This document shows, piece by piece, positions 44,357-64,000 of a DNA stretch of 64,000 nucleotides. Source of the DNA: Macrostomum lignano. Taxonomy: Eukaryota. Made by a program: the position numbers and the translations under genes. Where the stretch lies: contig NIVC01002232.1 of NCBI GenBank assembly GCA_002269645.1, forward strand, positions 127,099 to 191,098, read 5' to 3'. Each line of letters starts with the position of its first letter. The first letter of the stretch is position 1. The notes under the pieces are model-generated. The model was not told where the DNA came from. It worked only from the letters and a program-made list of their open reading frames with translations, and ran no database searches.

Positions 44357-44941
44357 AGTAGTAGTATGTTATAAGGGGCTGCGCCACACTTAATTGCTCG
44401 GGCGCATTGCGCGCCAGCTCGCTGGATGACTCAGCCCCTTATAACATACTACTACTACCAGGAGGTCATGGATTCAAGTGGGGGTGTGATAAATATAAAA
44501 ATACATATATCTGTGACTGAGGGTGTTGAGGGTGAGGGCATGTGGGGGCATTGGCCTGTGGAATATTTCACAGAACACAGAATTTCCGGAATTTTTATAC
44601 TTTTAAAAAGGGGGGGTGCCCTCGCCCTCATGCCCTCACTCATTTTGAAAATCACTAAAAACAGGTGAAAAATGACTAAAAACAGGTGAAAATGGTCTGA
44701 AAACAGCGATTTTTTGTAATTTTCAAAAATTTTGAAAAAGTGCAATTTTCACGATTCCAGCTCTAAAACCATGAGAAAAGTTGGATCCTCGGGTCAATTT
44801 AATGCAATTTCAGGTATATACAATATGAAAGTGTCATCCAATTCAACGATAGTAAATTATATATATATAAAATGGCCTTCAGTAAACCAATATTTCTAGG
44901 AAATGCTTTAGATATTCAGTCAGCTATAACAAAACTACCAC
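44357..44941 (+). repeat. Polinton left TIR
   Basis: Reverse complement of 62490-63074, with only a handful of differences, several in homopolymers. Confidence 0.95.
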
Positions 44942-45860
44942 CCATCTTTTCCACTGGAAAGTATCCTGGCGAATTTCATATTCCAGGGTATTCTTTCGCA
45001 AGCCAACAGCTCTGACTCACAATGCTGATGATGTATCAGAACCCCGTAACGTGGCACATTTTTGTCTATTTTTAGAACTAGAAAAAAATGAATGAAGCAA
45101 ACACAAAAGAATCTCAGACACACAGAGTGGGTGGCTCCACTGGAGCACAAAGGCAGCCTTTATTTCAAAGAGTTGTTTTCAAGGTATATACTAAGGTAAG
45201 TAGCGCGGAGTGAATGTTTGAATGATAATTGTCACTTTAAGTAGTAGCATGTCAATTTTTCTGGACGTCCAGAAAAAATTCTGGATATTTGTCTGCCATG
45301 TGTTTATTCATCAATAGAAGCGCTCCCCATTTCGCTAGTGGCTGCTTCAATCGTGTCGTTCTCTTCTTCATCAAGCATGCTGTCATCCTCTCCTTCAAAG
45401 TGCAGTACGATGTCGAGTTCGAGGCGGCATGCGAAATTCTCATCTTCTGATGCTCTTTGTTCAATTGCTCAAAGCAATATCCAGAAATTACCAGACTCGG
45501 GTACTTTGTTGTTAGCTTGTAGAATGTAAATAGTCGCTGGGCAAACTTCACATCTATATCTAGCTATCTTTTATCTTTTAACAAACACACACAAATAACT
45601 AGCATAACGTTTGAGAGTTGGTGAGTGTGCCAGTCCTGCATCAGCCTGTAAATTGTTGTGAAAGACAGCTAGCATGAGGGGTGCGCCTAGTGTCTTTTAT
45701 GAGTTGAATAAGGGGGTTTGATGAAGATGAAAAAACACTGAACTCCTGTGAGAGTCTCGGAGAGTGGCAGCGGAGTGTGGTGTGAGTCAGTCTCAATCTC
45801 TCAATCAGCGAAACCAGAATTCAAAAACCAGATTGTAACTGCTAAATTTTCCTAGAAAAA

Positions 45861-46202
45861 ATGGAAGCTAACCCAAATGTACGAAATGCACTGCCACAAA
45901 AGTATTATGATTCTATTATATATTTTTCTCAAATAAAAACACCCACTCGAAAGGCTCGACTAATTGAAGAAATTGATAAAGCCTACGATGAATATAAAGC
46001 AGAAATATTAAAACACAGCGATTGTAAATGCCCCCCATATTTGTATTCATTCAGAGTATATCTTGCACATGTTGATAAATGGGCATTGATTTCGAGACAG
46101 CACATAAGGAATGATGAATTTTTCGTCATGCTTAAGTTGAACATTTTCAAACTCCCCATAACCCTTGAGAAGTACATTGAAACTGATGAATTATATTGTT
46201 AA
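45861..46202 (+). CDS. Polinton hypothetical protein, 113 aa
   Basis: AAAAATG start; immediately upstream of the helicase. Confidence 0.55.
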   Translation: MEANPNVRNALPQKYYDSIIYFSQIKTPTRKARLIEEIDKAYDEYKAEILKHSDCKCPPYLYSFRVYLAHVDKWALISRQHIRNDEFFVMLKLNIFKLPITLEKYIETDELYC

Positions 46203-46218
46203 ATTTATTTTAAATAAA

Positions 46219-48687: not shown

Positions 48688-48708
48688 ACGAAGATGTTAT
48701 CAATGAGA

Positions 48709-51700: not shown

Positions 51701-51773
51701 GAGATTAAACCGCGAATTTCTTCAACGGAGTCGAGATCAATTCATAAGAGGCCGCTGGTATTTTCCTTTCCAT
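48709..51773 (-). CDS. polB: Protein-primed family B DNA polymerase (pPolB), split by several frameshifts in this sequence
   Basis: Motif A YLDKNNLYG, motif B KLLNNSFYGK, motif C YSDCDS. The N-terminal ORF (50455-51681) carries an endonuclease VII-like CxxC..EHNH..GKYRGAACxxCN module. The linker at 50172-50455 changes frame. Confidence 0.92.
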
Positions 51774-51798
51774 TTTTAAGAAAAAAAATTAAACAGAC

Positions 51799-52539
51799 TC
51801 AAGCATAGGGGGGTGCACTTGGAGCATTTGATTGAAGATTGAGTGTTGCCGAGTACTCTTTTGGCTTATCAGCTAGACCCAATTTTTCTCTCAGATCTTT
51901 CTCCAGCAGTTCCTTTTTAACTTTTTCCTTCGCTGAATTATCAAGTCTACTCTCTTTGAGGATTTTATCAACGAATTCCGAATGGTTAACTTCTTCAGGC
52001 GCAACACAGGTGTCTAACAATTGGTCTCTTTTCTCTCTGTATTCTGAATAAATTGCAGCAGCTGCTTGAACCTCTTCAAGAGTTAATCTATAATCATCAA
52101 CTGCTTTTTGGGAGTAAATATACAATCTCTCTCTGTATTGATTTGCCAGATCTCTGAGAACAATGTATTTTGCCTTCTGCTTTTGGCAATGCATTTTCAC
52201 AGTTGCAAACAACGACGTGGATTTTACAGCTTCAAAACCACTCATTGCCCCGATTACTACTCCAATAACTAAGGGATTCAATGTCAGTATCGATGTTGCT
52301 ATGCCAATTCCTGTAGCAGCCAAGAGACTTACATTTCCTGTCACAATGTTGATCCAATTTATCCTGCTACTTTGTCGTTTGTACTTTTTTACCTTTTTGC
52401 TATAAATTGTAAGATCTTTAGTAATGCATTCAATACTGCCTTTGATTTCACCCTTTCTCTGATTGAAATAGTCCCGCTCCCTCAAATCTGCTTCATGCAG
52501 CTCAACCACAGGATAGATGTGTTCATTTTTTTCATTCAT
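51799..52539 (-). CDS. Polinton membrane protein with hydrophobic hairpin, 246 aa
   Basis: TAAAAATG start. Basic helix followed by two Gly/Ala-rich hydrophobic segments. Resembles a recurrent accessory gene of animal Polintons. Confidence 0.7.
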   Translation of the reverse strand: MNEKNEHIYPVVELHEADLRERDYFNQRKGEIKGSIECITKDLTIYSKKVKKYKRQSSRINWINIVTGNVSLLAATGIGIATSILTLNPLVIGVVIGAMSGFEAVKSTSLFATVKMHCQKQKAKYIVLRDLANQYRERLYIYSQKAVDDYRLTLEEVQAAAAIYSEYREKRDQLLDTCVAPEEVNHSEFVDKILKESRLDNSAKEKVKKELLEKDLREKLGLADKPKEYSATLNLQSNAPSAPPYA

Positions 52540-52541
52540 TT

Positions 52542-53950
52542 TTATGTGGCGATTATGTCTAAAATCGGATAAAGTTGAAAGCCTGAAACTATAAGAACAG
52601 TTGATCCTTCAGTGGTTGAATTAATATGCACTCTATAAACAGAGAATTTTTCGGTGGAAGCTACTTCGAAATACTTCATCACTCCAGGAACTAAACCAGC
52701 GTTTTCGGTAGAAAAAATATTCTTAAAGTCTCTCTTGTTATTGCTTCCTTTCAGAATAAAAATTTTTGGTTGATTTTTTATAATTTCACTACCCACTGCT
52801 TTGGTTCCTTTCAACCCGAATTTCCAAATTCGAATGGACTCGGGAAGTTGTACTTCAATGTAAGAATTGGGTTCATTCCTCGATGCCCATTCTGAATTAG
52901 ATACTACATAACCCCAATTATCTGACGTTTCAAATGCTCCTGATGACGCTACATTGAAACCCCTTTCTCTATAGTTTTGACGTGTTGCTAGTGGGGAATA
53001 TATCCTGTATAAGATTTGAAACCTAGTCCCCGCCTTAGTCGCAGCTCCACTGATTCAAGTGCATTGTCTACGTATAGCTTTGGTACAGCTTGAAGTCTAT
53101 CTATAGGCCACACTAAATCATTAACCACTGTTTGTCTCTCAAGTAATTCAACTTTTGTAAGCTTTACGGAACCAGAAAAATTAAGAGAATAATGGAAATA
53201 ATATGAGGGATTGGGTATTTTTTTCCTAAGATGTGCATTGCCTCTTCGTAGTTCAATGGGTGCACTTTGTTCAACAGGTGTCCAGTTTGTTCCATTTAGG
53301 CTCACACTAACAGACCAACCAGGCCACACCTCTCCTTCCAACTTTATCTCTACAACTTTCCTAGCTCTTTTCAGAAATTGAACTCGTATCCACTTGTCTG
53401 AGTCATCTACACTGCTCCATTCTGAAGCTGGGTTTGAATCTGCAACATGATATGCTGCTGAAGAGTTATGAGAAGCGGTCACTTTCATGTCAGGATGGGA
53501 AGCGTTTGAAGTCAGTAATGAAAGAATATTGACTAATTTCGAACTCTCTGTACCTCCCGCAGTACCTTGCCTTTCTGCTAACAAAGTGTCAATCTCAGTT
53601 TTAGAATACATCTTAGTGTCAATCTCAGTTTTAGAATACATCTTAGTGTCAATTTCGGTTTTAGAATACATCTTAGTGTCAGTTTCGGTTTTTGTGTAGA
53701 CATTGTTTACGCGCCCATGAGCATCGTCAATTAATTGTAGCATGGTGATATTCATTGCGTCACTATCTTCCTTTGAATAAGAGTCTGAAACATTTCTCTT
53801 TGCTAACAATAAATTATCTATTTCCTCTCTCTTATATCCTTCATTTTCATTGATGTATCGATCATCAGCTAACGCTATTGTTATTCCAGGTGCTATATCA
53901 TTTGAATTTGACGAGTAACCAAATTGATTGGCAGTATTCTTGTAACTCAT
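52542..53950 (-). CDS. Putative fibre/receptor-binding protein with two discoidin (F5/8C)-like domains; one frameshift near 52995
   Basis: (YSKTEIDTKM) 30-bp repeats, then two beta-rich modules (AS..W.S..D..WI.V.F; WAS..NSYIEVQLP..FILKGSN). Adding one C in the CCCC run near 52995 joins ORFs 52988-53950 and 52542-52814. Confidence 0.6.
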
Positions 53951-54378
53951 TTTAATTGCTGCAAAATTTCATTATAGCTATCTCCTTTATCGATTCGGTG
54001 TAAAAAGTACAGCGACATTTGACCACAAAATTTCTTATCAAAAGTTTGAATTTGTTCTTCCATGTCTCCACATATTCTATTCTTTGTGTGATTAAACTTT
54101 TCCATAATTTCCAGTGTGGGCGGTAGTGCATAGGAATCAAAAAAATAAACCTTATCAGGAGCTGAAAATATAGCTGAATGATGTATACCCCGTTCTTTCG
54201 AAGTGTGAATATTTGTCATAAAGTAACCATACTGTGGTAAATCAACAATTTCATCTCTCATGGCATAGCGAAATGGTTTTAACTTGAGATATTTTGCCCA
54301 ATTTATCAGATCAATATTAGTCGTAGTGTCAGTCCCAAACTTTTGTTTAAATGCATTCCATGTCTCAGCTTCGCTCAT
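53947..54378 (-). CDS. Adenain-like cysteine maturation protease (PRO)
   Basis: GIHH, YFFDSYALPP, QIQ...FCG: His, Asp, Gln and Cys catalytic positions present. Confidence 0.9.
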   Translation of the reverse strand: MSEAETWNAFKQKFGTDTTTNIDLINWAKYLKLKPFRYAMRDEIVDLPQYGYFMTNIHTSKERGIHHSAIFSAPDKVYFFDSYALPPTLEIMEKFNHTKNRICGDMEEQIQTFDKKFCGQMSLYFLHRIDKGDSYNEILQQLK

Positions 54379-54387
54379 TTTTAACAC

Positions 54388-55177
54388 TCATATTTGTCGT
54401 ACGTGTAGATTTATAAATATTTCCTCGCCATCAAAGTCGTATAGAACACCAGACTCATCTTCGATGACAAAGTCGAATGTGCTCAACATGTTTGTAGTTA
54501 GTGGTAGGTACACAGGATTTGCAGGCTCTTGAATAATTTTACTTCCCATTGGGACAGAGAACGATGGAATTGAAAGAAGTATTTGCTTATCAATTAAATG
54601 ATTTCCATTGGCTGGATCAGTGATAAAACCCCCTTTGATATTGAGACAACGAACCATGATCGCACTTCTAGCTCCGTCTATCCGAGCTGGATTTGGAGCT
54701 CTCTCAAATGGTTTCAAATACACTTCCGAATTGAATCCCAACAGTCTTCTAAAGTTATTGGAATGTGCATCCCTGAAATCAACTTGATACTCTGTGGCTA
54801 ACCGTAACTCAACTCTACGCGTGTCTAGGCTTGCACTGAAAACAATAGCCCCTCTTTCCAATCATTTGCAGCTGTTAGCAATCTTTGAATCTCGCTTGAC
54901 AGACTTTTAACTTCCCAAGATCCTGCTTGAATCTTTATTTTTTCCATGTTCTACCACTATCCCTCGAGTATCGCAACTCATTATTGCCTCCTTCAATATT
55001 GTTAATAGCATCAAAGACTGCAAACTTTTTTATACCAGCTTCGTATTCTCGATCTTCATACAAATTTATAGGAGTGCCTAGAGTTTGTCGAAATGGGTTT
55101 TTAATTGAAAAGAAGTCAAATGTGCGTTGAAACTTTTTACTCAAGAGGATGTTGACTTTTTCTATTTCTTTTTCCAT
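54388..55177 (-). CDS. Minor capsid protein (penton, single jelly roll); frameshift near 54900-54935
   Basis: N-part PINL..YEAG..NNIEGGNNELRYS.D.G.TW; C-part P.GSKI..P.NPVYLPL..IEDESG.L.DF.GE.I.I.LH. Located between ATPase and protease. Confidence 0.8.
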
Positions 55178-55179
55178 TT

Positions 55180-55909
55180 TTAAGCAAGTAATTCTGCTAG
55201 CTCTTTATCAACATTGTTATGTCCCTCTGCTTTTGCGGCTAGTAATGTCAACACTCTTTCACTGAGTCCAGATCCCGGTTTTACTCGATATCCTGGTGGA
55301 TTATCTTTCAATATCCTTACTGCTTGCTTATAATTCCCACTTGATTTGGCCGCTGGATTTTTACATGTTCAATGAGGTTAACATAATCCTGCAATGTTTG
55401 CATCTTGAATTGCTTCAGCTCTTCACCATTTTCAGTTACTTTAGGCATTTTGAACAACTCTTCAAGATCTTCAGAAAATGGCATTCGAATTCGTTGACAA
55501 TGATGTCTCGACCTTGTTCATGGAATTCAACATCTATTACAGATGATCCAAATATATATCCAGCATCAGTTTTTTGAATCCGTATACTAGGCGCTGGTCT
55601 TTGAGTTATTGGAATCTTTCCAATTTCTTCAATTATTTTGTCAAATACTTCCAGAGGTTCAAATCGTCCTTTTGGTGTACTTGATTGCGGAACTGGAACT
55701 TTTTGATTCTGAAGTTTATCAACAAGGTTGGCATTGACATCAATAAATTCATCGAGCTTTTCTGTGACAGGTTTTTGAGCTAATGGAGCCACTCTTGCAT
55801 ATAAACTCTCTTCTCCAATTTTCAAATAGCGTTGAGCATCATTTCTGGATTTGTACGTTTCTCGCTGCTTTGCTAAATTAATGAGTTCTCTTATATATTC
55901 ATTAGTCAT
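55180..55909 (-). CDS. Conserved Polinton hypothetical protein (frameshifted)
   Basis: ORF 55436-55909 continues in other frames to GSGLSERVLTLLAAKAEGHNNVDKELAELLA*. The C-terminal L..R..LL.A..AG.N pattern recurs in Polintons. Confidence 0.55.
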
Positions 55910-55911
55910 TT

Positions 55912-56685
55912 TTACAATGGGATTTTAGTTAGAACATCCTTATACAAATCTTGCTCATCCTCATCAGCTCTTGTATTTATATAGATATAGCCATACTTCT
56001 TTTTCCAAGCCTCTCTACATTTAGCCTTGAATATAGCGGGTTCATAATTCGTTTCTATATTTCTAGCAATGTGATTCAAGTTTGTATCTTTTTGTTTAAA
56101 GATTATGTAACATGTCGTATTCTCCCTGACAGTATTGCGATCTAGTTTGGTAAAATTTTGAGCTAGATAAAAACCACAACAGTTTCCATGCCTGCCTCTC
56201 TGAAACAGACTTTCCTGAAATGTTTGATTAGCCTCTCCCAAAACATCGTCCAATATCACACATGTCTTTAGTCCATTATGAAAAATTTCTTCATTTGGAG
56301 TATGGGAAAGAGTGACAGGAATTTTCTCTATTACTTCTGAATTTTCTGATGTGCTTTGCACTCGACCAGGGTTGGCTGCCTCTCGACAAATATGTCTAAT
56401 ATCTTCAGGAGATGCATCCTCACTCACCTGGTAGACATGATAGAGTGAGTTGATAAGAGAAGGTGGGAGACCATTTTCAAAGCCATATTTTAGAAACTGA
56501 TACTCTGGATCCATTTGAGATGCTCTGGGAACATATAAAACTAACTCATTAAAGTCAACTAGTTTTTCAGGACTTGTAAGAATATGGAATAGTAAATATG
56601 TTTTACCCGTATTTGTAGCGCCGATAATACAACATAAAAGAGGATTAGGGAAAATAGGATCATGCTGAAATTTTACTTTGGGCAT
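55912..56685 (-). CDS. A32/FtsK-like DNA packaging ATPase
   Basis: Walker A IIGATNTGKT, Walker B VILDD, RGRH motif, F(Y)LAQ. Confidence 0.93.
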   Translation of the reverse strand: MPKVKFQHDPIFPNPLLCCIIGATNTGKTYLLFHILTSPEKLVDFNELVLYVPRASQMDPEYQFLKYGFENGLPPSLINSLYHVYQVSEDASPEDIRHICREAANPGRVQSTSENSEVIEKIPVTLSHTPNEEIFHNGLKTCVILDDVLGEANQTFQESLFQRGRHGNCCGFYLAQNFTKLDRNTVRENTTCYIIFKQKDTNLNHIARNIETNYEPAIFKAKCREAWKKKYGYIYINTRADEDEQDLYKDVLTKIPL

Positions 56686-56706
56686 TTAAAAAAAGAAAAA
56701 ATGACC

Positions 56707-58071
56707 TTATTCGACGCGGGTCATTTGATATTCACTGGTAACTTTTATTACATTCTTTGTTTGTTCAAGAATTAGTGCAAAAGCAGTCAGCTCAACATTT
56801 GTTGACTTCTTGATAAATAATTGAATATTCACTCCACTCTTGACCAGAAACTCATCTTGAGCTGTTAGATCAAAGCAAAAGATTGGATAGATGGTTAGAA
56901 AGTCTTGTTTATTGAATGGAGGAGTTACACCGAAACGGCTGCAGATGTCTTCGTACATTTCATACGCTCTGTGAATGTCTTGAGCTACTGGATCAATTTC
57001 AACATAATCATTCGGATACATCACCTGATTTAATCTGACTTGAAGCTGGGTTATTTTCACTGCATTTGCTCCAGTTTTGTAAGACACATACTTGTGATCA
57101 TTAACTATATATGATGGGTTGTTTACGTCATATTTGAAAGCTACAAAGATTGCAAGTGGCATATTGGAGATGTTGGCTATGTTCCATGTATATGGACTTC
57201 CTTGAATGAGTTGTGGTGGAACCGTTACCCTCTCTGGAAATGATACTGTAATGTCCTTGTTGAGTGATTTTAGAAAAGCTGCTTCAGCACTGGGTGACAA
57301 AGTAATAGCAGGGATCCAAATCTCAAAGCTATTAATAGTTAACTTAGCTTCCGTCCCGGCAGCTCCAAAGAAAATTTCAGCATCGTTAGTCTTTCTTGTC
57401 CATGTGAATTTATATTTAATTCCTTTGCTAATCTTCTGCCAATCAAGGAACCCAATGAGAGGTGTTAATGATAGTTTGATTGTTCCACCTCTGTTTGGAG
57501 CATTAGTGACATTGTTATAATTTTCAAGCCTCCTAATGTATCCAGTATTCGAATCCTTCTTATTGAGTCTATTTTTCATAGCGATTGCTGCAGTTCTCAC
57601 AGCTTCAGCATCTGCGTTGTTTGCTAGAGGTATATCAGAAACAGTCCCAGCATCTCCAGTGTCTGGAATCCATCCGTATGCTTCTCCAACTTCATTCATT
57701 AATTTTGAGTACATTACGGACTTTAAGATTGTGTCATACTCTCCAGGATCATTATAGACTTTCTTTGTTCCTCCAATGTCAACTATGAGTTGAGAGAAAA
57801 GTCTCATAGGCCAATTATGTTCTAGAGTAATGTTCGTATTCAAGTCGGTGTTATCTCGTTGTGTTATTGAGTATTTTATACAACCGAATGCCTCTGACAT
57901 GAGAATGTATGACTCTGTTGAATTGACTTCATGAACTATTTGACCTCCTGCAACATTGAGATTATTAGTGCTACCTGGAGTTGGAGAAATCTTAATATAG
58001 TCTTCTTTCTTTTTGAAAAAGCTAAAAGTTTTGTCCTCATATATGCTCAGTATATCCTTTTTGTTCTCCAT
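56707..58071 (-). CDS. Major capsid protein (double jelly roll), 454 aa
   Basis: Size, position and beta-rich motifs typical of Polinton MCP (I...P.....LN..G.QI..EV; PLAIFVAF; YPIFCFDLT). Intact ORF. Confidence 0.85.
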   Translation of the reverse strand: MENKKDILSIYEDKTFSFFKKKEDYIKISPTPGSTNNLNVAGGQIVHEVNSTESYILMSEAFGCIKYSITQRDNTDLNTNITLEHNWPMRLFSQLIVDIGGTKKVYNDPGEYDTILKSVMYSKLMNEVGEAYGWIPDTGDAGTVSDIPLANNADAEAVRTAAIAMKNRLNKKDSNTGYIRRLENYNNVTNAPNRGGTIKLSLTPLIGFLDWQKISKGIKYKFTWTRKTNDAEIFFGAAGTEAKLTINSFEIWIPAITLSPSAEAAFLKSLNKDITVSFPERVTVPPQLIQGSPYTWNIANISNMPLAIFVAFKYDVNNPSYIVNDHKYVSYKTGANAVKITQLQVRLNQVMYPNDYVEIDPVAQDIHRAYEMYEDICSRFGVTPPFNKQDFLTIYPIFCFDLTAQDEFLVKSGVNIQLFIKKSTNVELTAFALILEQTKNVIKVTSEYQMTRVE

Positions 58072-58114
58072 TTTTATAAGAGAAATTTCAACTAAGCTTC
58101 ATGAGGTCTAAGAA

Positions 58115-58543
58115 TTATCCCATTACCCTGTTTCTCCTTTTCAACTTTAAAGTCTTTAGCAGCCACTTGACTGCTTCGCTGGGTACTTGTTCGACTCTTT
58201 TAGCCGCATCAACTAATACTCCACTCCCTTGAGCCTTTTTCAACTCTTCTAGTTTTTGCCGTTCAATGCTTTCTATTGTCTTATTATGTTTAGCATTGTT
58301 GGCTGTATTAACACTTTTTGCAATCATTGTACCAACTCCTGAGGCTGCTCCGATACCACCCAAAATTGCTGGTAGTAAGCCTAATAGAGGAATTATTCCA
58401 CCTTCATGTTCTTTCTGTTTCTCTTGCAATTCTCGAATCTTCTCTTTAGAAAGATATTGCTTTTGCTTATTTACAGTAACATATCTTGGTTTTCCCTCTC
58501 GAACATATCGATTGAGTCTTGCTTCAGTGTTTTTCTCGCTCAT
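58115..58543 (-). CDS. Basic core/membrane-lytic-like virion protein, 142 aa
   Basis: EGGIIPLLGLLPAILGGIGAASG: GG-type protease cleavage site followed by an amphipathic segment, as in Polinton and adenovirus core proteins. Confidence 0.65.
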   Translation of the reverse strand: MSEKNTEARLNRYVREGKPRYVTVNKQKQYLSKEKIRELQEKQKEHEGGIIPLLGLLPAILGGIGAASGVGTMIAKSVNTANNAKHNKTIESIERQKLEELKKAQGSGVLVDAAKRVEQVPSEAVKWLLKTLKLKRRNRVMG

Positions 58544-58551
58544 TTTTAAGG

Positions 58552-58974
58552 TCAGAATTTCTTCAAACCATTGCCTTGTCTCAAAGACACTTGAGACTGT
58601 TCTGCTGTTCCTAGAGCCTTTTTAACAATATCTTGAATAGCCTTATTTGATTGAGAAGCTATCTGTTGCTCTTCTTCCATTCTTTTCTTTGCTTCTTTAT
58701 CTCTACGTTTCTTTTTAATATATTCCAGTTCCTCACCTGCTTTAGACATGTCACTGTATGATTTCTTCGCATCGAATATGTTCTTCGCTGTGGTAGCTGT
58801 TTTACCTATTGCATCAGCTCCACTCACAATTTTACTTCCATGATTTGATAAAAAGTTTGTGACACCACTGATCATATCACCAATTCCTTCACCCTCTTTA
58901 TCAGCTAGTAGTTGTGAATCAGACGTTTCAATCTGACCTTTCGCCCGTTTGCAGTTTGTTCGATAGGCGCTCAT
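58552..58974 (-). CDS. Putative virion core protein (GEG cleavage motif), 140 aa
   Basis: AAAAATG start at 58974; EGEGIGDMISGV..amphipathic helix; GNG near the C-terminus. Confidence 0.6.
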   Translation of the reverse strand: MSAYRTNCKRAKGQIETSDSQLLADKEGEGIGDMISGVTNFLSNHGSKIVSGADAIGKTATTAKNIFDAKKSYSDMSKAGEELEYIKKKRRDKEAKKRMEEEQQIASQSNKAIQDIVKKALGTAEQSQVSLRQGNGLKKF

Positions 58975-61173
58975 TTTTAGTTGAAAAATTTGCTGGTAGA
59001 AGCTGGGATTTGTAAAATGATCCAATGATTTCTTCTCCATTCTCATCCTCAATAATGTAGGTTATGGGATTGGAGTAAACTATTTTCTTTATCCTAAACA
59101 CTTCTGAAATTTTCCAATATCCTCTTCGACCCTTTTCAAAGTGCTCCTTATATCTATAGATATGAACTTTGTCACCTACTTTGAAGTTTGGTTTCTCATT
59201 TGAATACTCGAAAGTTGGCTTTGGTACTCGCTCAGGATGTTTAGATGCTTCTGAAGGAGTTATCAGAATCTCAGAATGGATTGTGTTGTTGTATTTTTCA
59301 ACAATAGCTGGCAATGTGTGGAGCCACTTCTGATTACCCTGTAGATCAAATTCAAACCAGAGTTTATTTGTGAGAGTACGATTGAACCTCTCAATCATTG
59401 CATTCTTGGACTCGCCATAAATTGAAAACATCTTGTTAATATATTCACCCCTTTCATCCTTCTTTCTAATGTTGTCTTTTGAAAACGAGTATAGCTTGTA
59501 CATATGCTGATTATAAAACTCCTTGCCTTCATCTACACAAAGTCTCTCTGATCGTCTTCCTGATTCCTTAAATACTTTTTGGAAAGCTTCTGCAACTTCC
59601 GCTCCCGTCTTTGTTTTCAAAGGAACTGCCCAGGCGTAACGTGTAAAACCATCTATGATAGTTAGAGCATATTTGTAACCTCTTTCGGGCGGTAGGATAA
59701 TGATATCTGCATGCCAAATTGTGTCTTTTGCATAGTGAATCATTTTTCTAAATACTCTTGGCTTTCGATATTCTTTATGCAATTTTACTGCATCTTCATA
59801 GCTAAGACCCTTACCATAAATTGTTAGACAGTCTATACAATTGTTGGGGTTGTGAGTATGAATGCCTAATCCAAACCGAACTTTAGCCTTGATAATACGC
59901 TTTACTAGATTTCGAATGAGTCTCTCTTTCACAGACAAGTCACTGGTTGGAATAGCATCTAAATCAGCTATCATTTTTTCATCAGCTATATGCTTCTTTG
60001 CTAGAGCTTCCTCTGGATTTGAAGAAGTGTTTTCAGCATCTCTATAGTTTTTGTCATGATAGTAAGCAGTCCAATCGATTGGGTTAATTGGTAGACTGTC
60101 ATACCGAGGCCGGTCTGTAATTGGATTGAGTCTCTTGTCTAAATTTGTACCGGCAGTTGATCCTCAGTCTTTCGAAAGAGGCTGGACTTTATCTTAAGGC
60201 ATCATCAGGATTGACCAGATCCTTCAGCCCCACCTCCATAAAGTCTCTGAACCTTCTCCATATCCTTGTCAACTTTAATGGACGTACCATAGGTACTCGA
60301 TCAAAGATCGGACTTAGGAGCTTGGCTGCGGATTTCCACCATGTCCTCAAGCTTGTTACCGTTGGGAACAGGAATTACCTGTGTTCCTTCAGAAGATTTC
60401 TCAGCTGAAGTGGTACTTGAGGCTATTGAAGGAGTTCCCGCAATTTGAAGGTGTCGCCATTCACTAAGCACTTGTTTAACCTTGGTTATAATGTTTGTGT
60501 ATTTATCCCGATAAAGAAATTTCAATGCAAATTCTCCTGTTAAGGGTGATTCCATTGTCTAGTAAAATATTCTTAGGTTCGTTTGCAGTTTTATTGATGC
60601 ATACATAAAACAACTGGTAGGTGGGATTAGACTTTTTATAGTCTAATAGTTTCCGATAGTTACTTTCACGACTTGAGGAATTGTCTGTGTTATCAGAAGA
60701 TTTAAGCTCTAATGCAATCTTTCGCTCAACGTGAACCAGGTCAATCTTTTTTACCTTTTCGAATCCAAAATATTTTTCTGCTAAAACTTCATATAGTCTA
60801 CCTAGTCTCATTTGAATAACTTTAATCTTGTGTGAAATTATTAGCTCTTCTTGAAATAAATCGCAAAGAATTTGGTCATACCCCACCTTGTCGTCAATTG
60901 GTTTCAAGAGAATTTCTCGAATTTTTTGCTCCATTTTTACTTTAAAAATTTAACAAGTGCTTATCGATCGCCCTGAAGGGACGCGAGCTCTGCTCGATGA
61001 CTAGCAAGGACATTGACTTTCCTCACTCAGGCCACAAGGTAACCTGCAAAAGAATACCCTGGAATATGAAATTCTCCAGGATATTTTCCAGTAGAGAAGA
61101 TGGGTGGCAGTTTTGTCATAGCTGACTGAATGTCTAATGCAGAACCAAGAAATAGTGGTTTATTGAAGGCCAT
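58928..61173 (-). CDS. int: PLA2-like domain fused to retroviral-type DDE integrase; two exons (61173-61041 and 60153-58928) split by a group I intron
   Basis: Exon 1: MAFNKP...GEFHIPGYSFAG. Exon 2: GTNLDKRL...PINPIDWTAYYHDKNY (PLA2 HD motif), then the integrase core WHAD, IDGFTRYAW, VDEGKEF, IERFNRTL. The join is in frame (1359 nt). Confidence 0.88.
60154..61040 (-). ncRNA. Self-splicing group I intron, subgroup IC1
   Basis: P AAAUUGCGGGAA (60435-60446); Q AAUCCGCAGC (60325-60334); R GUUCAGAGACU (60242-60252); S AAGAUAAAGUCC (60184-60195). P3 ACCUUC/GAAGGU; P4 UGCGG/CCGCA; P7 GACUUUA/UAAAGUC. P5a-like GGUAACAAGC. P1 CAGGU/GCCUG with a U.G pair; terminal G at 60154. Confidence 0.93.
60503..60934 (-). 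CDS. Intron-encoded putative PD-(D/E)xK homing endonuclease (probable frameshift near 60540 extends the C-terminus)
   Basis: QMRLGRLYE...IDLVHVERKIALELKSSDNTDNSS: D-x9-E-x-K restriction-fold signature. Lies inside the intron between P1 and P3. TAAAAATG start. Confidence 0.68.
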   Translation of the reverse strand: MEQKIREILLKPIDDKVGYDQILCDLFQEELIISHKIKVIQMRLGRLYEVLAEKYFGFEKVKKIDLVHVERKIALELKSSDNTDNSSSRESNYRKLLDYKKSNPTYQLFYVCINKTANEPKNILLDNGITLNRRICIEISLSG

Positions 61174-61440
61174 TTTATAGAGATTTTTTTATTTCTTTAT
61201 TTTTACTTGTAAAGTGTTTGTATACATTCCATTGAGTACTTAATAGACTGAATTTTAAGACAAGTCGAGACAATAATCCAAAGCGACATGTTACACAAAA
61301 CAGATCGCTGATAAAAGATCTTGGTATATTTTAAAAGAAACTTATAAGACGATGCATAACAATCCTTAGTCACAGTCACAATGACAATCCTTAGTCACAG
61401 TCCTTACAGTCCTCCTTAGTCACAGTCACAGTGATAGTCC

Positions 61441-61857
61441 TTAGTCACTCATGTCTTGGTCTTGAGCAGCTTGGTCTTGAGCAGCTTGGTTTTGAGCAGC
61501 TTGGTCTTGAGCAGCTTGGTCTTGAGCAGCTTGGTTTTGAGCAGCTTGTTGTTGAGCATCCTCGTATGTCGGAGGTGCCTCTGGAACGTCTACATCTAGC
61601 GAGCGCTCGATTTCTAGTTGGCGTTGATTTTCTAAGATAGAACGATCCTTCGCAATGGTTTTTTTAACTAGCCTAAGCATCGCAATGTCGTTCTCAATTT
61701 TGTCGAAGTATACGCGATAATGCTCAAGGAATTGATTCTCATTTGTAGACGTGACGAAGCTAGTATTGGGGTATTGTGTGTGAATCAAACCTCTCAAATT
61801 GTTTCTCTCTTGTGTGTTCACAAGTATTCTAGCACGCCTAGTTGGATTTCCGGGCAT
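61441..61857 (-). CDS. Polinton hypothetical protein, 138 aa, with PPTY motif and (QAAQD/N) 15-bp repeats
   Basis: ORF track; coiled-coil-like middle region. Confidence 0.5.
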   Translation of the reverse strand: MPGNPTRRARILVNTQERNNLRGLIHTQYPNTSFVTSTNENQFLEHYRVYFDKIENDIAMLRLVKKTIAKDRSILENQRQLEIERSLDVDVPEAPPTYEDAQQQAAQNQAAQDQAAQDQAAQNQAAQDQAAQDQDMSD

Positions 61858-62489
61858 TCTGTTCGTTCGGAATGAAAACTGATAATTTAAGCAGAGGACA
61901 CTTGTTGCGGATACTATTTTGGGTATGCCCTTAAATGCTGTCTAAAATGTCTTATGCCAGCCGCTAATTGGTTGCCACTGCCCTGCCACTGCCCTGCCAC
62001 TGCCCTGCCACTGCCTTGCCACTGCCCTGTGGCAGTGACAGATTTTTTCTCTCTAGAGTGAGTGAGTAGCAGTGTGTTATACGGGCTGAGTCATCCAGCG
62101 GCAGCGAGCTGGCGCGCAATGCGCCCGAGCAATAAGTGTGGCATTGAAGTGGGTTGCAAATGCATGCTGTAGCAGCTTGGAGGGGAGTTGATGAATGGCT
62201 GTTCGCAGCTAATCTAAACCTTTAATTCTTTGCATGATGCTGGAGGGTTTTTGAGTGAGTCAGAGAGAATAGAAGACAGAGGTGATGAAGATATGGAAGA
62301 AGCCATGATTCTTAGTCATCGTGATAACAATGCTGTCTACAATTCGAATACATTCAGTCCACAGGGTGAAGGAGAATTTTGCAATTCAGAAGTAATTCTA
62401 TTGTGCAAAATCTGCATCAGAATTTATTCATGTTTCAGCAAGCCAATAGAAATGTTGAGTGCTGCTTTTCATTGTTGCAGAGTTGACAA

Positions 62490-63074
62490 GTGGCAGTTTT
62501 GTTATAGCTGACTGAATATCTAAAGCATTTCCTAGAAATATTGGTTTACTGAAGGCCATTTTATATATATATAATTTACTATCGTTGAATTGGATGACAC
62601 TTTCATATTGTATATACCTGAAATTGCATTAAATTGACCGAGGATCCAACTTTTCTCATGGTTTTAGAGCTGGAATCGTGAAAATTGCACTTTTTCAAAA
62701 TTTTTGAAAATCACAAAAAATCGCTGTTTTCAGACCATTTTCACCTGTTTTTAGTCATTTTTCACTTATTTTTAGTGATTTTCAAAATGAGTGAGGGCAT
62801 GAGGGCGAGGGCACCCCCCCCTTTTTAAAAGTATAAAAATTCCGGAAATTCTGTGTTCTGTGAAATATTCCACAGGCCAATGCCCCCACATGCCCTCACC
62901 CTCAACACCCTCAGTCACAGATATATGTATTTTTATATTTATCACACACCCCACTTGAATCCATGACCTCCTGGTAGTAGTAGTATGTTATAAGGGGCTG
63001 AGTCATCCAGCGAGCTGGCGCGCAATGCGCCGAGCAATTAAGTGTGGCGCAGCCCCTTATAACATACTACTACT
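62490..63074 (-). repeat. Polinton right TIR
   Basis: Reverse complement of 44357-44941. Confidence 0.95.
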
Positions 63075-64000
63075 GACGGCAGCCTGAGAATTGTACAAGA
63101 TTTTAGAATCTGAACCAGAAATGTGATACTTTCTGTACCGATTCCAAACACCCAAGAAGCATTTGCCAGCCTCAAAGGAAGCCAGCTATTCAGCACATTT
63201 GATTTGAACAGTGGCTATTATCAGATTCTGCTGCATCCAGAAGATCAAGAACTGACTGCCTTCGCCACGCTGCACCGCAGACAGTTTGCCTACAATTTTA
63301 TGCCTATGGGATTAAGCTCAGCACTAGCCAGCTTCATGCGATTGATGAACGCTATGCTAAACGGATTGCCGTTGCCGCAGTTCAGTGAGGATCCTGAAGT
63401 AATTTTTGTCCTGGAAATAGATGCTTCTGCGACCCAAATTGGAGCCTGCCTGAGCCAATGCCAAGCTGACAATATCGAACAGCCTATTGGCTATTTTTCC
63501 CGGCAACTCAAACCAGCTGAAGCCCGATATATGATAACTAAATAGGAACTCTTGGCAGTTGTAGACAGTATGCACATTTCTGCTTCTACTGCTGGCCAAG
63601 TTCATCTGCCATACTGATCATGGCCGCGTTGACCTAGATTCTTTGACAAACTCAGCAAGTAGGCATCTTTGAACAATGGCTACAGAGATCAGCGAATTCG
63701 AGTTTGAAATCCAGCATTGCAAATCAAGTCAGCACCAAAACGCCGACAGTCTCTCAAGGCGGCCTGAGGATGATGGCTGAATGCATAGAGGAGGCTCAGC
63801 GAGAGGCAGCTGATGAGGACCAAAGTAAGCAGCTAGCCGCAATAACTGGCACAGCGGCGCCAAAGGTCCTTGATAGCAACCACCTAGCCCTCCACCGAGC
63901 AAGAAGCCATGGACCACCAGAAGCAACGGAGACCGCCAATGAATCTGAAGGAGTCCAACGGCGAGGCTACGCGCCAGCAACACTGTCAGCCGACAGTAAG
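63075..64000 (+). mobile_element. Gypsy/Ty3 remnant, 3' part (RT remainder and RNase H), continuing past the window
   Basis: DG|SLRIVQDF, FSTFDLNSGYYQI, MPMGL, then directly RNase H (VLEIDAS..IGACLSQ, IGYFSRQL, ELLAVV, HQNADSLSR). The YxDD segment is missing. Confidence 0.88.

What the first reader, a model, noticed from the sequence alone, without database searches (positions are those of the whole stretch)
60154..61041. Subgroup IC1 self-splicing group I intron inside an endogenous Polinton in an animal-type nuclear genome
Seen in sequence: an ~887-nt insertion splits the PLA2 motif HIPGYSFAG|xGT. On the minus strand it carries every group I core element in order: P1 (exon CAGGU paired with intron GCCUG, U.G at the splice site), P3, P/Q (P4), a P5abc segment GGUAACAAGCUUGAGGACAUGG...CGCAGCCAAGCUCCUAAGUC close to the Tetrahymena LSU intron, R/S (P7 G-binding helix), a UCUUUCGAAAGA P9 hairpin and a terminal G. 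Established knowledge: IC1 introns are typical of protist, fungal and algal nuclear rDNA, with some in algal viruses. In animals, group I introns are known from mitochondria of non-bilaterians. Inference: a Polinton has carried a ribozyme intron into a protein-coding gene in an animal nucleus, which I do not know to have been described. Junction ambiguity: splicing after GGU U gives FAGSGT in frame. Splicing after GGU gives the canonical FAGPGT only if one C is missing from this sequence (CC read for CCC), which would fit the homopolymer indels seen elsewhere in the element.
Basis: partly seen in the sequence, partly recalled or inferred. Interest (0 to 1): 0.96.

Follow-up and report, generated by a model that had tools for sequence, protein, structure and literature searches.

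The report
Self-splicing intron in flatworm Polinton
A virus-like element integrated in a flatworm chromosome carries a genuine group I (ribozyme) intron that encodes a restriction-enzyme-like nuclease, and the element lacks every copy of that nuclease's likely 5-base target, which suggests an intron that spreads by cutting rival copies.

Summary
Window 60154-61041 (minus strand) is a group I intron: RF00028 scores 82.6 bits against a gathering score of 50. Across 12 related introns, 96% of cells in the P3-P8/P5abc structure are paired and 37 of 66 pairs show compensatory changes. The guide sequence covaries with the exon. The intron splits the Gly-Pro step of a parvovirus-type PLA2 motif at the start of an rve integrase gene. 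That gene lies in an 18.7-kb Maverick-Polinton-type element with terminal inverted repeats. A flanking gene is 99% identical to Macrostomum lignano proteins, so the host is an animal. The empty site of an intron-less allele is GGACC, and the insertion point splits it. GGNCC is the only one of 136 comparable words that is absent from the whole element (11-21 expected). Free-standing relatives of the ORF sit beside cytosine methylases in giant-virus contigs. IC1 membership and actual splicing remain untested. In this copy the intron ORF has one frameshift, and the exons are in frame only with a splice site one base from the one its relatives use. RF00028 hits in protist Polinton-like viruses were reported in 2025. 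I found no report from an animal nucleus.

The parts
44353..63078 (-). Whole virus-like element (Maverick-Polinton type, about 18.7 kb), low G+C (0.33-0.40) against 0.41-0.54 in most of the flank
   Evidence: Terminal inverted repeats, composition, gene content. A possible 4-bp duplication (ACGG) lies outside both termini. Zero GGNCC words in the whole element.
44353..45000 (+). Left terminal inverted repeat, including a terminal fold-back and a copy of exon 1 of the integrase gene (44872-45000)
   Evidence: I1-I6, I9, I4; 88% identity to exon 1.
62490..63078 (-). Right terminal inverted repeat (97-100% to the left arm), with a terminal fold-back and a partial copy of the gene start
   Evidence: The arms differ by 5 substitutions and 4 one-base indels.
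58928..61173 (-). Integrase gene (PLA2-like N-terminal domain + rve core + C-terminal region), interrupted by the intron. Exon 1 is 61173 down to about 61042 and exon 2 is 60153 down to 58928. Under the junction used by relatives the two exons are in different frames (counted as one frameshift). With a 5' splice site one base further on they are in frame.
   Evidence: Pfam rve 39.8 bits and Phospholip_A2_4 18.1 bits on exon 2. 453 relatives, many uninterrupted at 440-490 aa with both domains. Exon-wise alignment.
60154..61041 (-). Group I intron (888 nt by the junction homologous to relatives; 887 nt if the 5' splice site is one base further on)
61026..61046 (-). P1: end of exon 1 paired with the internal guide sequence, with two adjacent U.G pairs at the splice site
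   Evidence: Fold. Covariation between exon and guide: CAGG/CCUG in the window and L006, UAGG/CCUA in L001, L002, L004, L005.
61003..61025 (-). P2 hairpin directly after P1
   Evidence: Fold. Both strands differ between copies while pairing is kept: AGGA/UCCU, AGGAG/CUCCU, CUAUA/UAUAG.
60346..60934 (-). Intron-encoded nuclease gene, Eco47II restriction-endonuclease family (PD-(D/E)XK). The open frame as it stands is 60503-60934 (143 aa). Relative to full-length relatives it has one frameshift. The outer bounds of the likeness are 60934 down to 60346 (to 60208 for the longest relatives, whose tails read through the ribozyme core).
   Evidence: Pfam PF09553 28.2 bits (cut-off 25.9). 15 relatives at 48-67% identity. 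D65...E76-x-K78 conserved. Predicted fold nearest PD-(D/E)XK restriction enzymes. Two HSPs in two frames.
60172..60466 (-). Ribozyme core. Each helix is given as 5' strand / 3' strand: P3 60447-60453/60231-60237; P4 60437-60442/60327-60332; P5 60431-60432/60336-60337; P5a 60411-60422/60345-60361; P5b 60401-60410/60387-60396; P5c 60378-60382/60368-60372; P6 60324-60326/60251-60253; P6a 60317-60320/60256-60259; P6b 60310-60313/60262-60265; P7 60238-60245/60185-60192; P8 60219-60229/60198-60211
   Evidence: structure and covariation; coordinates; 65 of 66 pairs in the window.
60154..60181 (-). P9 hairpin and 3' terminal G (60154). This region varies in length among relatives, and two of them lack the hairpin.
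46165..48687 (+). Replication gene: AEP primase (weak), PriCT-2, D5_N, SF3 helicase. It stands in place of a protein-primed polymerase.
   Evidence: Pfam, NCBIfam primase_Cterm.
56707..58071 (-). Major capsid protein, double jelly roll
   Evidence: Pfam DJR-like_dom 50.7 bits.
55912..56685 (-). A32-like packaging ATPase
   Evidence: Pfam Pox_A32 26.1 bits.
52988..53950 (-). Protein with a discoidin (F5/8 type C) domain, a possible fibre or attachment protein
   Evidence: Pfam 29.0 bits. Discoidin fibre domains in Polinton-like viruses are described in PMC12220804.
50455..51681 (-). 408-aa protein with a C-terminal Endonuclease VII-like (HNH-type) stretch
   Evidence: Pfam 24.0 bits.
10744..15790 (-). 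Host gene in the flank: carnitine O-acetyltransferase-like, at least four exons
   Evidence: Pfam, PDB sequence matches, 99% identity to Macrostomum lignano proteins PAA59778.1, PAA89479.1 and UniRef100_A0A1I8I752.

Best explanation
This is a mobile group I intron living in the integrase gene of a Maverick-Polinton-type virus-like element that has integrated into the genome of the flatworm Macrostomum lignano. Shown: the ribozyme is a structurally intact member of a large family of introns found in giant-virus and other viral contigs. Its guide sequence is matched to the exon. It interrupts the Gly-Pro step of the PLA2-type motif (Y-x-G-P-G). Closely related elements exist with and without it at the same site. 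Inferred: after transcription the RNA folds, P1 presents the U.G pair, a free guanosine attacks the 5' splice site, and the terminal G directs exon ligation. That would restore the motif so that the PLA2-integrase protein can be made without the spliceosome. Inferred from three independent lines: the intron spreads through its own nuclease, a restriction-type enzyme of the Eco47II family that cuts GGNCC. Any Gly-Pro codon pair (GGN CCN) spells that word, so every intron-less allele with the standard motif carries the target. The intron splits and destroys the target. The carrier element has lost every other copy of the word, so it is immune without a methylase. A cut in an intron-less copy in the same nucleus or the same co-infection would be repaired from the intron-bearing copy (homing). 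Such a cut could also simply damage a rival. In this particular copy the nuclease gene has one frameshift, and the exons are in frame only with a shifted 5' splice site. Its present activity is therefore uncertain, and single-base assembly errors cannot be told from real changes.
For: Ribozyme: RF00028 scores 82.6 bits in the window and 77.3 bits in relative L004. Of 66 pairs, 96.2% of cells are paired, 37 pairs are compensatory, and 0 of 500 shuffles reach the score; slid controls give 36-45%. The window has 65 of 66 pairs and 96 of 96 family-invariant columns. P1 covaries with the exon. P1 and P2 fold. Family: a profile of the core gives 193 matches in 120 viral loci. Host gene and site. Presence/absence: intron-less allele L147 comes from the same assembly as intron-bearing L001-L004, is 96% and 91% identical in nucleotides to L004's two exon parts, and has the empty site GGA|CCC. 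Nuclease: PF09553 is above its cut-off, D...ExK is conserved, and the predicted fold is nearest DdmD nuclease, EcoO109I, Ecl18kI, BamHI and AvaII. Eco47II homologues cut G/GNCC (PMC10305163). Target and immunity: the only GGNCC in L147 spans the insertion point. The whole element has 0 GGNCC against 20.7 or 11.5 expected (P 1e-9 or 1e-5), and it is the only absent word of 136, while the control word CCNGG occurs 18 times against 18-19 expected in the element body. The element's ORFs have 0 Gly-Pro against 9 Pro-Gly dipeptides. L001 and L005 element parts also have 0. Controls: observed/expected is 0.82-0.88 in 1.05 Mb of viral contigs with the same ribozyme but no such nuclease, and 0.21-0.36 in loci with the free-standing nuclease. 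Origin: 11 of 23 neighbours of free-standing relatives are C5 cytosine methylases, with no ribozyme nearby. Animal host. Integration: TIRs 97-100% alike.
Against: There is no expression or splicing evidence of any kind. In the window the intron ORF has one frameshift relative to its relatives. The exons are out of frame under the junction that four relatives share. The window's P10 pairing with exon 2 is weaker than in relatives (reading). The GGNCC specificity is inferred from family membership (28.2 bits, only just above the cut-off) and from word statistics, not measured. A 5-base target occurs 57 times in the 44-kb host flank, so an active enzyme of that specificity would cut host DNA widely. 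That is unlike classical homing endonucleases and raises the question of how it could be tolerated. Relative L004 has one GGNCC in 3.5 kb. The counts for L001 and L005 are weak on their own (1.6-3.4 expected). The right end of the element is composite, so the copy may be rearranged.
Confidence: 0.7

Rival explanations
1. Dead passenger. The intron family is real and was once mobile, but this integrated copy is a decaying relic. It is not transcribed or not spliced in the flatworm, the integrase is not made, and the nuclease is inactive. This rival concerns the present state of this copy, not what the feature is.
For: One frameshift in the intron ORF. Exons out of frame under the family junction. 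Composite right end with duplicated gene starts and an inner terminus-like piece. Decayed relatives exist: L002 keeps only the first part of the core and L003 has none.
Against: The ribozyme core is intact: 65 of 66 pairs and 96 of 96 invariant columns. TIR arms are 97-100% alike and nearly all element ORFs are long and open, which indicates a recent insertion. Half of the differences between the TIR arms are one-base indels, mostly in homopolymers, so single frameshifts may be assembly noise. An in-frame junction exists with the sequence as it stands.
Confidence: 0.35
2. The insertion is removed by the spliceosome, using the GT at the end of exon 1 and an AG just after the P9 hairpin. The ribozyme would be irrelevant in the animal nucleus.
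For: In the window that GT...AG junction happens to keep the reading frame and adds three residues to the loop (reading). The host is an animal with ordinary spliceosomal introns, for example in the flanking gene.
Against: The equivalent GT...AG junctions in relative L004 do not keep the frame, while the group I junction is in frame in L001, L004, L005 and L006. Selection visible as covariation acts on the ribozyme helices and on the P1 guide, which a spliceosomal intron would not need. The other genes of the element are intron-less.
Confidence: 0.07
3. The GGNCC-free state is a defence against restriction enzymes of co-infecting giant viruses that carry Eco47II-type restriction-modification pairs. 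The intron ORF would then be a captured restriction gene used as a weapon against rival DNA, and it would not drive homing of the intron.
For: Free-standing relatives paired with C5 methylases are common in giant-virus contigs, and those loci are themselves depleted in GGNCC. A 5-base specificity fits a general DNA-degrading weapon better than a homing enzyme. There is a phage precedent for an intron nuclease used in competition between viruses (PMC11620839).
Against: The insertion point bisects the one GGNCC of the empty allele. The ORF sits inside the intron in all seven copies. Its reading frame runs into the ribozyme core in the relatives. All three points fit the layout of a homing unit. 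The two roles do not exclude each other. No giant virus of flatworms is known to me (own knowledge).
Confidence: 0.15
4. Assembly artefact or contaminant. The element belongs to a protist, to food algae or to a free virus, and was joined to flatworm DNA by a chimeric long-read assembly.
For: G+C differs from the flank. Only 922 bases of flank lie to the right. The nearest ribozyme and nuclease relatives are in environmental viral contigs. Endogenous protist elements with RF00028 hits are known (PMC12220804).
Against: Complete TIRs abut 44 kb of flank that holds a gene 99% identical to M. lignano proteins. A candidate 4-bp target duplication lies outside both termini. The gene set matches the animal-genome 'group 2 Maverick-Polintons'. 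Relatives L002-L004 are embedded among piggyBac, Tc1/mariner-type and retroelement fragments, as in a eukaryotic chromosome.
Confidence: 0.05

Closest known systems
RF00028 group I introns in endogenous Polinton-like viruses of protists (Paulinella micropora, Rhodomonas lacustris, Desmodesmus armatus; PMC12220804, 2025)
   Same: A group I intron inside a protein-coding gene of a small integrated double-jelly-roll DNA virus. Found by the same Rfam model.
   Different: Those hosts are protists and this one is an animal. In R. lacustris the intron sits in a ~50-aa gene upstream of the capsid gene and no intron protein was annotated. Here it sits in the PLA2-integrase gene and encodes a restriction-type nuclease. 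That paper reports counts only, with no structure, junction or mobility analysis. I could not compare sequences.
Mobile group I introns with homing endonuclease genes in large DNA viruses and phages (e.g. phage T4 td with I-TevI; chlorovirus and mimivirus introns). Own knowledge, plus for reviews.
   Same: A self-splicing intron in a viral protein-coding gene, an ORF looped out of a peripheral part of the ribozyme, presence/absence among close relatives, and a target in a conserved motif.
   Different: The nuclease family is different: Eco47II-type PD-(D/E)XK rather than GIY-YIG, HNH or LAGLIDADG. The inferred target is only 5 bases long. Immunity appears to come from purging the word from the whole carrier genome.
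I-Ssp6803I, the PD-(D/E)XK homing endonuclease of a cyanobacterial tRNA group I intron (own knowledge; it did not come back as a hit)
   Same: A restriction-enzyme fold used by an intron-encoded nuclease.
   Different: No detectable sequence or top-ranked fold similarity here. I-Ssp6803I recognises a long site. This ORF belongs to a named restriction-enzyme family.
Type II restriction-modification systems of the Eco47II/Sau96I kind (GGNCC) with a C5 methylase; PF09553; PMC10305163
   Same: Family membership of the nuclease (Pfam). Free-standing relatives beside C5 methylases in giant-virus contigs. Depletion of the site in carrier DNA.
   Different: Here there is no methylase partner in the element. 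The gene is inside a ribozyme intron. The host replicon is a eukaryotic virus-like element in an animal genome.
Nuclear group I introns of protists and fungi (subgroups IC1 and IE, e.g. the Tetrahymena rRNA intron); PMC3679873
   Same: Location in a eukaryotic nucleus, the core architecture, and a P5abc-type extension.
   Different: PMC3679873 states that all known nuclear group I introns interrupt rRNA genes. This one interrupts a protein-coding gene of a virus-like element. Subgroup identity was not tested.
Group 2 Maverick-Polintons / adintovirus-like elements of animal genomes (preprint 10.64898/2026.06.19.733378)
   Same: rve integrase, double-jelly-roll capsid protein, A32 ATPase, a helicase-primase replication gene in place of pPolB, a phospholipase domain, TIRs, and an animal host.
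   Different: No intron is mentioned in that preprint (0 occurrences). A cysteine protease and a minor capsid protein were not identified here.

Membership tests
Group I intron (Rfam RF00028) | Covariance-model score at or above the curated gathering score | tested here: met
   82.6 bits against 50, full-length match. Relative L004 scores 77.3 bits.
Group I intron (Rfam RF00028) | Conserved core helices P3-P8, including the P3/P7 pseudoknot, supported by covariation | tested here: met
   66 pairs, 96.2% of cells paired, 37 pairs with compensatory changes, 0 of 500 shuffles, slid controls 36-45%.
Group I intron (Rfam RF00028) | P1 formed by the 5' exon and an internal guide sequence, with a U.G pair at the 5' splice site | tested here: met
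   Fold. Exon and guide change together in different copies. The window has two adjacent U.G pairs.
Group I intron (Rfam RF00028) | Terminal G at the 3' splice site and exon ligation that restores the host reading frame | tested here: inconclusive
   A G precedes exon 2 in all five complete copies, and four relatives are in frame. The window is in frame only with the 5' site one base further on.
Group I intron (Rfam RF00028) | Self-splicing activity | not testable with these tools
   No expression or biochemical data are available.
Subgroup IC1 | P5abc three-way extension of P5 | tested here: met
   P5a, P5b and P5c are all supported by compensatory changes.
Subgroup IC1 | The remaining subgroup-specific features (peripheral helices P2.1, P9.1/9.2, junction sequences), or a best score with a subgroup-specific model | not testable with these tools
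   Rfam has one model for all subgroups and no comparator sequence is available. P9 is short or absent in relatives, which is not what I recall for typical IC1 introns (own knowledge).
Mobile intron with homing endonuclease | Nuclease ORF inside the intron, outside the catalytic core | tested here: met
   The ORF lies between P2 and P3 in the window and in six relatives.
Mobile intron with homing endonuclease | Presence/absence of the intron at one site among closely related host genes | tested here: met
   L147 (empty) against L004 and L001 (occupied), same assembly, 91-96% nucleotide identity in the exons.
Mobile intron with homing endonuclease | The nuclease's target spans the insertion point and is destroyed by the insertion | tested here: inconclusive
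   GGNCC spans the empty site and is split by the intron. The specificity is inferred from family membership (PMC10305163) and site avoidance, not measured.
Eco47II restriction endonuclease family (PF09553), PD-(D/E)XK | Pfam score above cut-off, catalytic D...(D/E)xK, restriction-endonuclease fold | tested here: met
   28.2 bits against 25.9. Four relatives carry precomputed PF09553 hits. D65, E76 and K78 are conserved. Foldseek matches to DdmD nuclease, EcoO109I, Ecl18kI, BamHI and AvaII are at modest scores, TM 0.35-0.57.
Maverick-Polinton (Polintoviricetes) | Protein-primed family B DNA polymerase | tested here: not met
   No polymerase family hit in any ORF. The replication gene is a primase/D5-type helicase. 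This is allowed in 'group 2' of preprint 10.64898/2026.06.19.733378.
Maverick-Polinton (Polintoviricetes) | rve integrase, double-jelly-roll major capsid protein, A32-like ATPase | tested here: met
   Pfam hits above cut-off for all three.
Maverick-Polinton (Polintoviricetes) | Adenovirus-type cysteine protease and minor (penton) capsid protein | tested here: inconclusive
   No Pfam hit. Several ORFs of 140-490 aa remain unassigned. No profile-profile or fold search was run on them.
Maverick-Polinton (Polintoviricetes) | Terminal inverted repeats and a short target-site duplication | tested here: met
   TIRs of about 590-650 bp, 97-100% alike. The duplication is only a 4-bp candidate (ACGG), shorter than the 6 bp I recall as usual (own knowledge).
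Parvovirus-type phospholipase A2 domain (PF08398) | Pfam score above cut-off; Y-x-G-x-G loop and H-D-x-x-Y catalytic motif | tested here: inconclusive
   Exon 2 alone scores 18.1 bits against 23.9. Uninterrupted relatives carry PF08398. H-D-x-x-Y is present in exon 2 and the loop is split by the intron. The joined product was not searched.

The most novel reading that the evidence does not exclude
An active homing system in an animal nucleus. A group I ribozyme intron carried by a flatworm Maverick-Polinton would splice itself out of an mRNA without the spliceosome. It would spread among co-resident or co-infecting elements through a methylase-less restriction enzyme of 5-base specificity. The carrier would tolerate this only because it has purged every GGNCC, and hence every Gly-Pro dipeptide, from its genome. 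This would be the first group I intron at work outside mitochondria in an animal. It would also be a restriction enzyme turned into a homing and competition weapon in a eukaryotic virus-like element.
Probability: 0.3. Interest if true: 0.9.

Novelty: new variant of a known kind. Interest (0 to 1): 0.74.

Why it matters
Reviews state that nuclear group I introns are confined to rRNA genes (PMC3679873) and that animal group I introns are confined to the mitochondria of a few phyla (PMC5360047). This intron is in a protein-coding gene on an animal chromosome, brought there by a virus-like element. That makes an old question testable in a laboratory flatworm with public genomes and transcriptomes: can a ribozyme intron work in an animal nuclear mRNA? 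The nuclease result is a second point of interest. A restriction-enzyme family normally paired with a methylase appears here without one, inside an intron, aimed at a word that the conserved Gly-Pro of the host motif must spell. The carrier has removed that word everywhere else. This is a compact natural example of a restriction enzyme becoming a homing or competition device, and of genome-wide word and dipeptide avoidance in a eukaryotic element. It also links the mobile elements of giant viruses, Polinton-like viruses and animal Polintons.

Tried and rejected
1. Protist host. PMC12220804 reports RF00028 hits and discoidin fibre domains in Paulinella micropora elements, and this element has a discoidin protein, so I suspected a rhizarian host. 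I rejected this when the flanking gene proved 99% identical to Macrostomum lignano proteins.

2. Pooled Rfam scans. They gave nothing for L001-L004 or L007-L026. The first result was a false negative, because L004 alone scores 77.3 bits. I therefore re-tested with a profile of the family core. That confirmed the core in L001, L004, L005 and L006, part of it in L002, none in L003, and none in L007-L026.

3. Other searches on the intron ORF. Sequence search against PDB chains found nothing meaningful and NCBIfam found nothing.

4. Exact look-up of the window's intron ORF: not on record.

5. Supplements of PMC12220804: no RF00028 table is held.

6. P2 covariation by column counts. The MAFFT register differs between copies, so I read it directly and folded each copy instead.

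7. A helix closing around the ORF (GCUAGU-type pairing before and after it). It is plausible by eye but the register shifts between copies, so I do not claim it.

8. IC1 assignment: no tool or comparator was available.

9. Joined-exon protein search and Pfam scan of the spliced product.

10. The first GGNCC simulation script timed out. I replaced it with analytic expectations.


Full report
**1. The observation**

Rfam's group I intron model (RF00028) matches window 60163-60523 on the minus strand at 82.6 bits. The gathering score is 50, the E-value is 1.6e-20, and the match covers the full model. It is the only Rfam match above gathering in the 64 kb.

- Exon 1 starts at 61173 and ends ...CAGGU, paired with GCCUG a few bases into the intron.
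- A hairpin follows.
- Further downstream lie the core, a small P9 hairpin and a G at 60154, just before exon 2.

**2. The element and the host**

Inverted repeats of about 590-650 bp, 97-100% alike, bound an 18.7-kb block (44353-63078) of low G+C. Its genes are as follows:
- a primase/D5-type SF3 helicase
- a double-jelly-roll capsid protein
- an A32-like ATPase
- a discoidin-domain protein
- a protein with an Endonuclease VII-like end
- the interrupted gene, whose exon 2 has an rve integrase core (39.8 bits) after a weak PLA2-like stretch (18.1 bits, below the cut-off)

No protein-primed polymerase and no protease were detected. This gene set matches the 'group 2 Maverick-Polintons' of animal genomes in preprint 10.64898/2026.06.19.733378. 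In that group, helicase-primase genes replace pPolB and a phospholipase domain is common.

The flank holds a multi-exon carnitine acetyltransferase-like gene. Its last exon is 99% identical to predicted proteins of the flatworm Macrostomum lignano: PAA59778.1, PAA89479.1 and UniRef100_A0A1I8I752. The next best hit, at 69%, is also from M. lignano, and every other hit is at or below 50%. I had suspected a rhizarian host (section 8), and this result rules that out.

**3. Relatives**

The intron ORF has 15 relatives at 48-67% identity, all from metagenome-type assemblies. Their contigs show the same layout: exon 1, P1/P2, ORF, core, PLA2-rve exon 2, small ORFs, capsid gene, ATPase. Several lie among piggyBac, Tc1/mariner-type and retroelement fragments, as in a eukaryotic chromosome.

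In the relatives the ORF is longer and its reading frame runs into the ribozyme core. Relative to them, the window's ORF is spread over two frames, which I count as one frameshift. I do not give its place.

A 22-base motif of the core occurs exactly in more than 120 IMG/VR contigs, many of them giant-virus MAGs. A profile of the core finds 193 matches in those 120 loci. None of these has this ORF or this integrase. The ribozyme therefore belongs to a large viral intron family. The combination of this intron, this ORF and the integrase insertion site is specific to the window and its six close relatives.

**4. Structure**

I aligned twelve non-redundant cores: the window, four close relatives and seven viral contigs. 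RNAalifold recovered P4, P5, a three-way P5a/b/c, P6/6a/6b, P7 and P8. Of its 62 predicted pairs, 32 show compensatory changes. I added P3 by hand as a pseudoknot and dropped three predicted pairs that clash with it, which left 66 pairs in all. The results were:
- 96.2% of cells are paired, against 36-45% when partners are slid.
- 37 of the 66 pairs have changes on both sides.
- 0 of 500 shuffles reach the observed score.

The window's own core forms 65 of the 66 pairs and keeps all 96 columns that are invariant in the other eleven sequences.

P1 covaries with the exon. Exon CAGG pairs with guide CCUG in the window and L006. Exon UAGG pairs with guide CCUA in L001, L002, L004 and L005. P2 changes on both strands while keeping its pairing. 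P9 varies in length and is absent in two relatives.

A P5abc extension is present, which fits IC1. No subgroup-specific model or comparator was available, so IC1 is untested.

**5. The junction**

Uninterrupted relatives of the integrase (440-490 aa, PLA2 + rve) are abundant. They read ...Y-N-Y-L-G-P-G-T-R-L-D... at the point where the window's exon 1 ends (...Y-S-F-A-G) and exon 2 begins (G-T-N-L-D...). H-D-x-x-Y follows in exon 2.

In L001, L004, L005 and L006 the junction is ...GGU | intron ... G | CCN GGN ACA, which gives G-P-G-T in frame. With that same junction, the window's two exons are in different frames. With a 5' splice site one base further on, the sequence as it stands is in frame and reads F-A-G-S-G-T. 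At that position the window, unlike its relatives, has a second U.G pair in P1.

The two TIR arms differ by 5 substitutions and 4 one-base indels, 3 of them homopolymer-type. Single-base frame problems in this assembly therefore cannot be taken at face value.

**6. Mobility and the nuclease**

*Presence/absence.* An intron-less allele (L147) comes from the same assembly as the intron-bearing L001-L004. It is 96% and 91% identical in nucleotides to L004's two exon parts. Its empty site reads ...GGA|CCC GGT....

*Nuclease family.* The intron ORF matches Pfam PF09553, the Eco47II restriction endonuclease family, at 28.2 bits against a cut-off of 25.9. It keeps a D...E-x-K motif. Its predicted fold has mean pLDDT 79. 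Its nearest solved structures are PD-(D/E)XK nucleases: the DdmD nuclease domain, EcoO109I, Ecl18kI, BamHI and AvaII, at modest scores. Eco47II homologues cut G/GNCC (PMC10305163).

*Target.* The empty site is GGACC, split by the insertion point, and it is the only GGNCC in L147's 2.5 kb. The exon ends of the window, L004 and L006 likewise supply GGT and CC.

*Site avoidance.*
- In the whole 18.7-kb element GGNCC occurs 0 times. The expectation is 20.7 (first-order) or 11.5 (maximal-order Markov), giving P about 1e-9 or 1e-5.
- GGNCC is the only one of the 136 words of the form XXNXX that is absent from the element.
- The control word CCNGG occurs 18 times in the element body, against 18-19 expected.
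- The host flank has 57 GGNCC against 67-100 expected, and the word is not an outlier there.
- The element parts of L001 and L005 also have none. L004 has one in 3.5 kb.
- Because Gly-Pro is always GGN-CCN, the element's ORFs contain 0 Gly-Pro dipeptides (7.3 expected) against 9 Pro-Gly.
- In 39 of the 42 integrase relatives with a single Gly-Pro, that dipeptide is the one in the motif.

*Controls.* In 1.05 Mb of viral contigs with the same ribozyme family but no such nuclease, GGNCC observed/expected is 0.82-0.88, and only 1 of 66 loci of 8 kb or more has none. In the loci that carry free-standing relatives of the nuclease, the ratio is 0.21-0.36.

*Origin.* Those free-standing relatives (30-40% identity, from lake metagenomes and giant-virus MAGs) have no ribozyme nearby. 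In 11 of 23 neighbouring ORFs the neighbour is a C5 cytosine methylase, so these are ordinary restriction-modification pairs. No methylase was detected in the window's element.

**7. Explanation**

Shown:
- a structurally intact group I ribozyme, matched to its exon
- its place in the integrase gene of a Polinton-type element in a flatworm chromosome
- intron-plus and intron-less alleles among close relatives
- a restriction-type nuclease gene inside the intron
- an empty site that spells that family's word
- complete absence of the word from the carrier

Inferred:
- The RNA splices itself and restores the PLA2 motif.
- The nuclease cuts GGNCC in intron-less copies, and repair from an intron-bearing copy spreads the intron. 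The same cut could also harm rivals (compare PMC11620839).
- The carrier is immune through site avoidance rather than methylation.

Open:
- Whether this copy is active. It has one frameshift in the nuclease gene and a frame discrepancy between the exons under the family junction, and there are no expression data.
- How an enzyme with a 5-base target could be tolerated by the host.

**8. What is known**

PMC12220804 (2025) reports RF00028 hits in endogenous Polinton-like viruses of three protists, as counts and without further analysis. PMC3679873 states that all known nuclear group I introns interrupt rRNA genes. PMC5360047 confines animal group I introns to the mitochondria of a few phyla. 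No paper in the library links Macrostomum, adintoviruses or animal Maverick-Polintons with a group I intron.

I therefore rate this a new variant of a known kind. The kind is a mobile group I intron in a viral gene. The new features are the animal-nuclear setting, the host gene and the nuclease family with its avoidance signature.

**9. Conduct**

Before the host was known, I fetched metagenome contigs that carry relatives of the element by look-up. L001-L003 came with 10-kb flanks. I also ran two related-locus scans and one pattern scan. The finding itself had already called the host animal-type. Once the host proved to be an animal, I fetched no more.

I joined, mended or turned into a consensus nothing. 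The profile built from alignment A5 was used only as a search device, and nothing was printed from it.

Two slips occurred in my working notes to myself, not in any call, note or output:
- While reading alignment A1, I worked out roughly where the intron ORF's frameshift lies.
- I began to recall a well-known ciliate intron sequence from memory.

I stopped in both cases and used neither.

Noticed in passing
window 44872-45000 (compare 61045-61173): The left TIR arm holds an 88%-identical copy of exon 1 of the integrase gene. The likeness stops within a few bases of the intron insertion point, which is also the predicted nuclease cut site, and unrelated DNA follows. It could be a scar of a cut joined to other DNA, or simply the inner edge of the repeat.
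   Followed up: partly
window 61185-63078: The right end is composite. The outer TIR (62490-63078, 99% to the left arm) contains a second, shorter copy of the gene start (62490-62559). An inner piece (62102-62133) is 100% identical to the left terminus region 44393-44424. This suggests two related elements nested or recombined.
   Followed up: partly
window 44354-44459 and 62976-63074: Each terminus can fold back on itself (30-33-nt arms, 91-93% complementary). The weak Rfam 'mir-606' match at 62968-63082 (27.9 bits, far below its gathering score of 80) is just this hairpin. Fold-back ends may bear on how an element with a primase-helicase, not a protein-primed polymerase, copies its ends.
   Followed up: no
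window 44349-44352 and 63075-63078: The same four bases (ACGG) lie just outside the shared terminal sequence on both sides. This is a candidate 4-bp target-site duplication, shorter than the 6 bp I recall as usual for Polintons.
   Followed up: no
window 10744-15790, minus strand: Host gene for a carnitine O-acetyltransferase-like protein, with at least four exons of about 120 aa. It is about 46% identical to human CRAT in the last exon and 99% identical to Macrostomum lignano predicted proteins. This is what identified the host.
   Followed up: yes
L001-L004: Method note: a pooled Rfam scan at gathering threshold with the fast filters returned nothing for loci that hold a 77-bit group I intron. 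Surveys of Polinton-like elements that rely on such scans probably undercount this intron family.
   Followed up: yes
L007-L025 (lake metagenomes and giant-virus MAGs): Free-standing relatives of the intron nuclease sit beside C5 cytosine methylases (11 of 23 neighbours). These loci are themselves depleted in GGNCC (5 observed, 14-24 expected). That supports GGNCC as the family's target in eukaryotic viruses too.
   Followed up: partly
window 51799-52539, minus strand: A 246-aa ORF has a weak SLATT_1 match (21.6 bits, below the cut-off of 41). SLATT-domain genes are listed among Polinton-like virus genes in preprint 10.64898/2026.06.19.733378.
   Followed up: no
window 61441-61857 and 61990-62050: A 138-aa ORF ends in a Gln/Ala-rich tandem repeat. 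A short (GGCAGTGGCAGG)n array lies upstream of it, between the inner terminus-like piece and the integrase gene. No family hit.
   Followed up: no
integrase relatives P0022, P0030, P0035: A few uninterrupted integrases read G-A-Q-T instead of G-P-G-T at the motif, so they cannot spell GGNCC there. They may be alleles that escape the nuclease. The window's in-frame junction model (G-S-G-T) would not spell GGNCC either.
   Followed up: no
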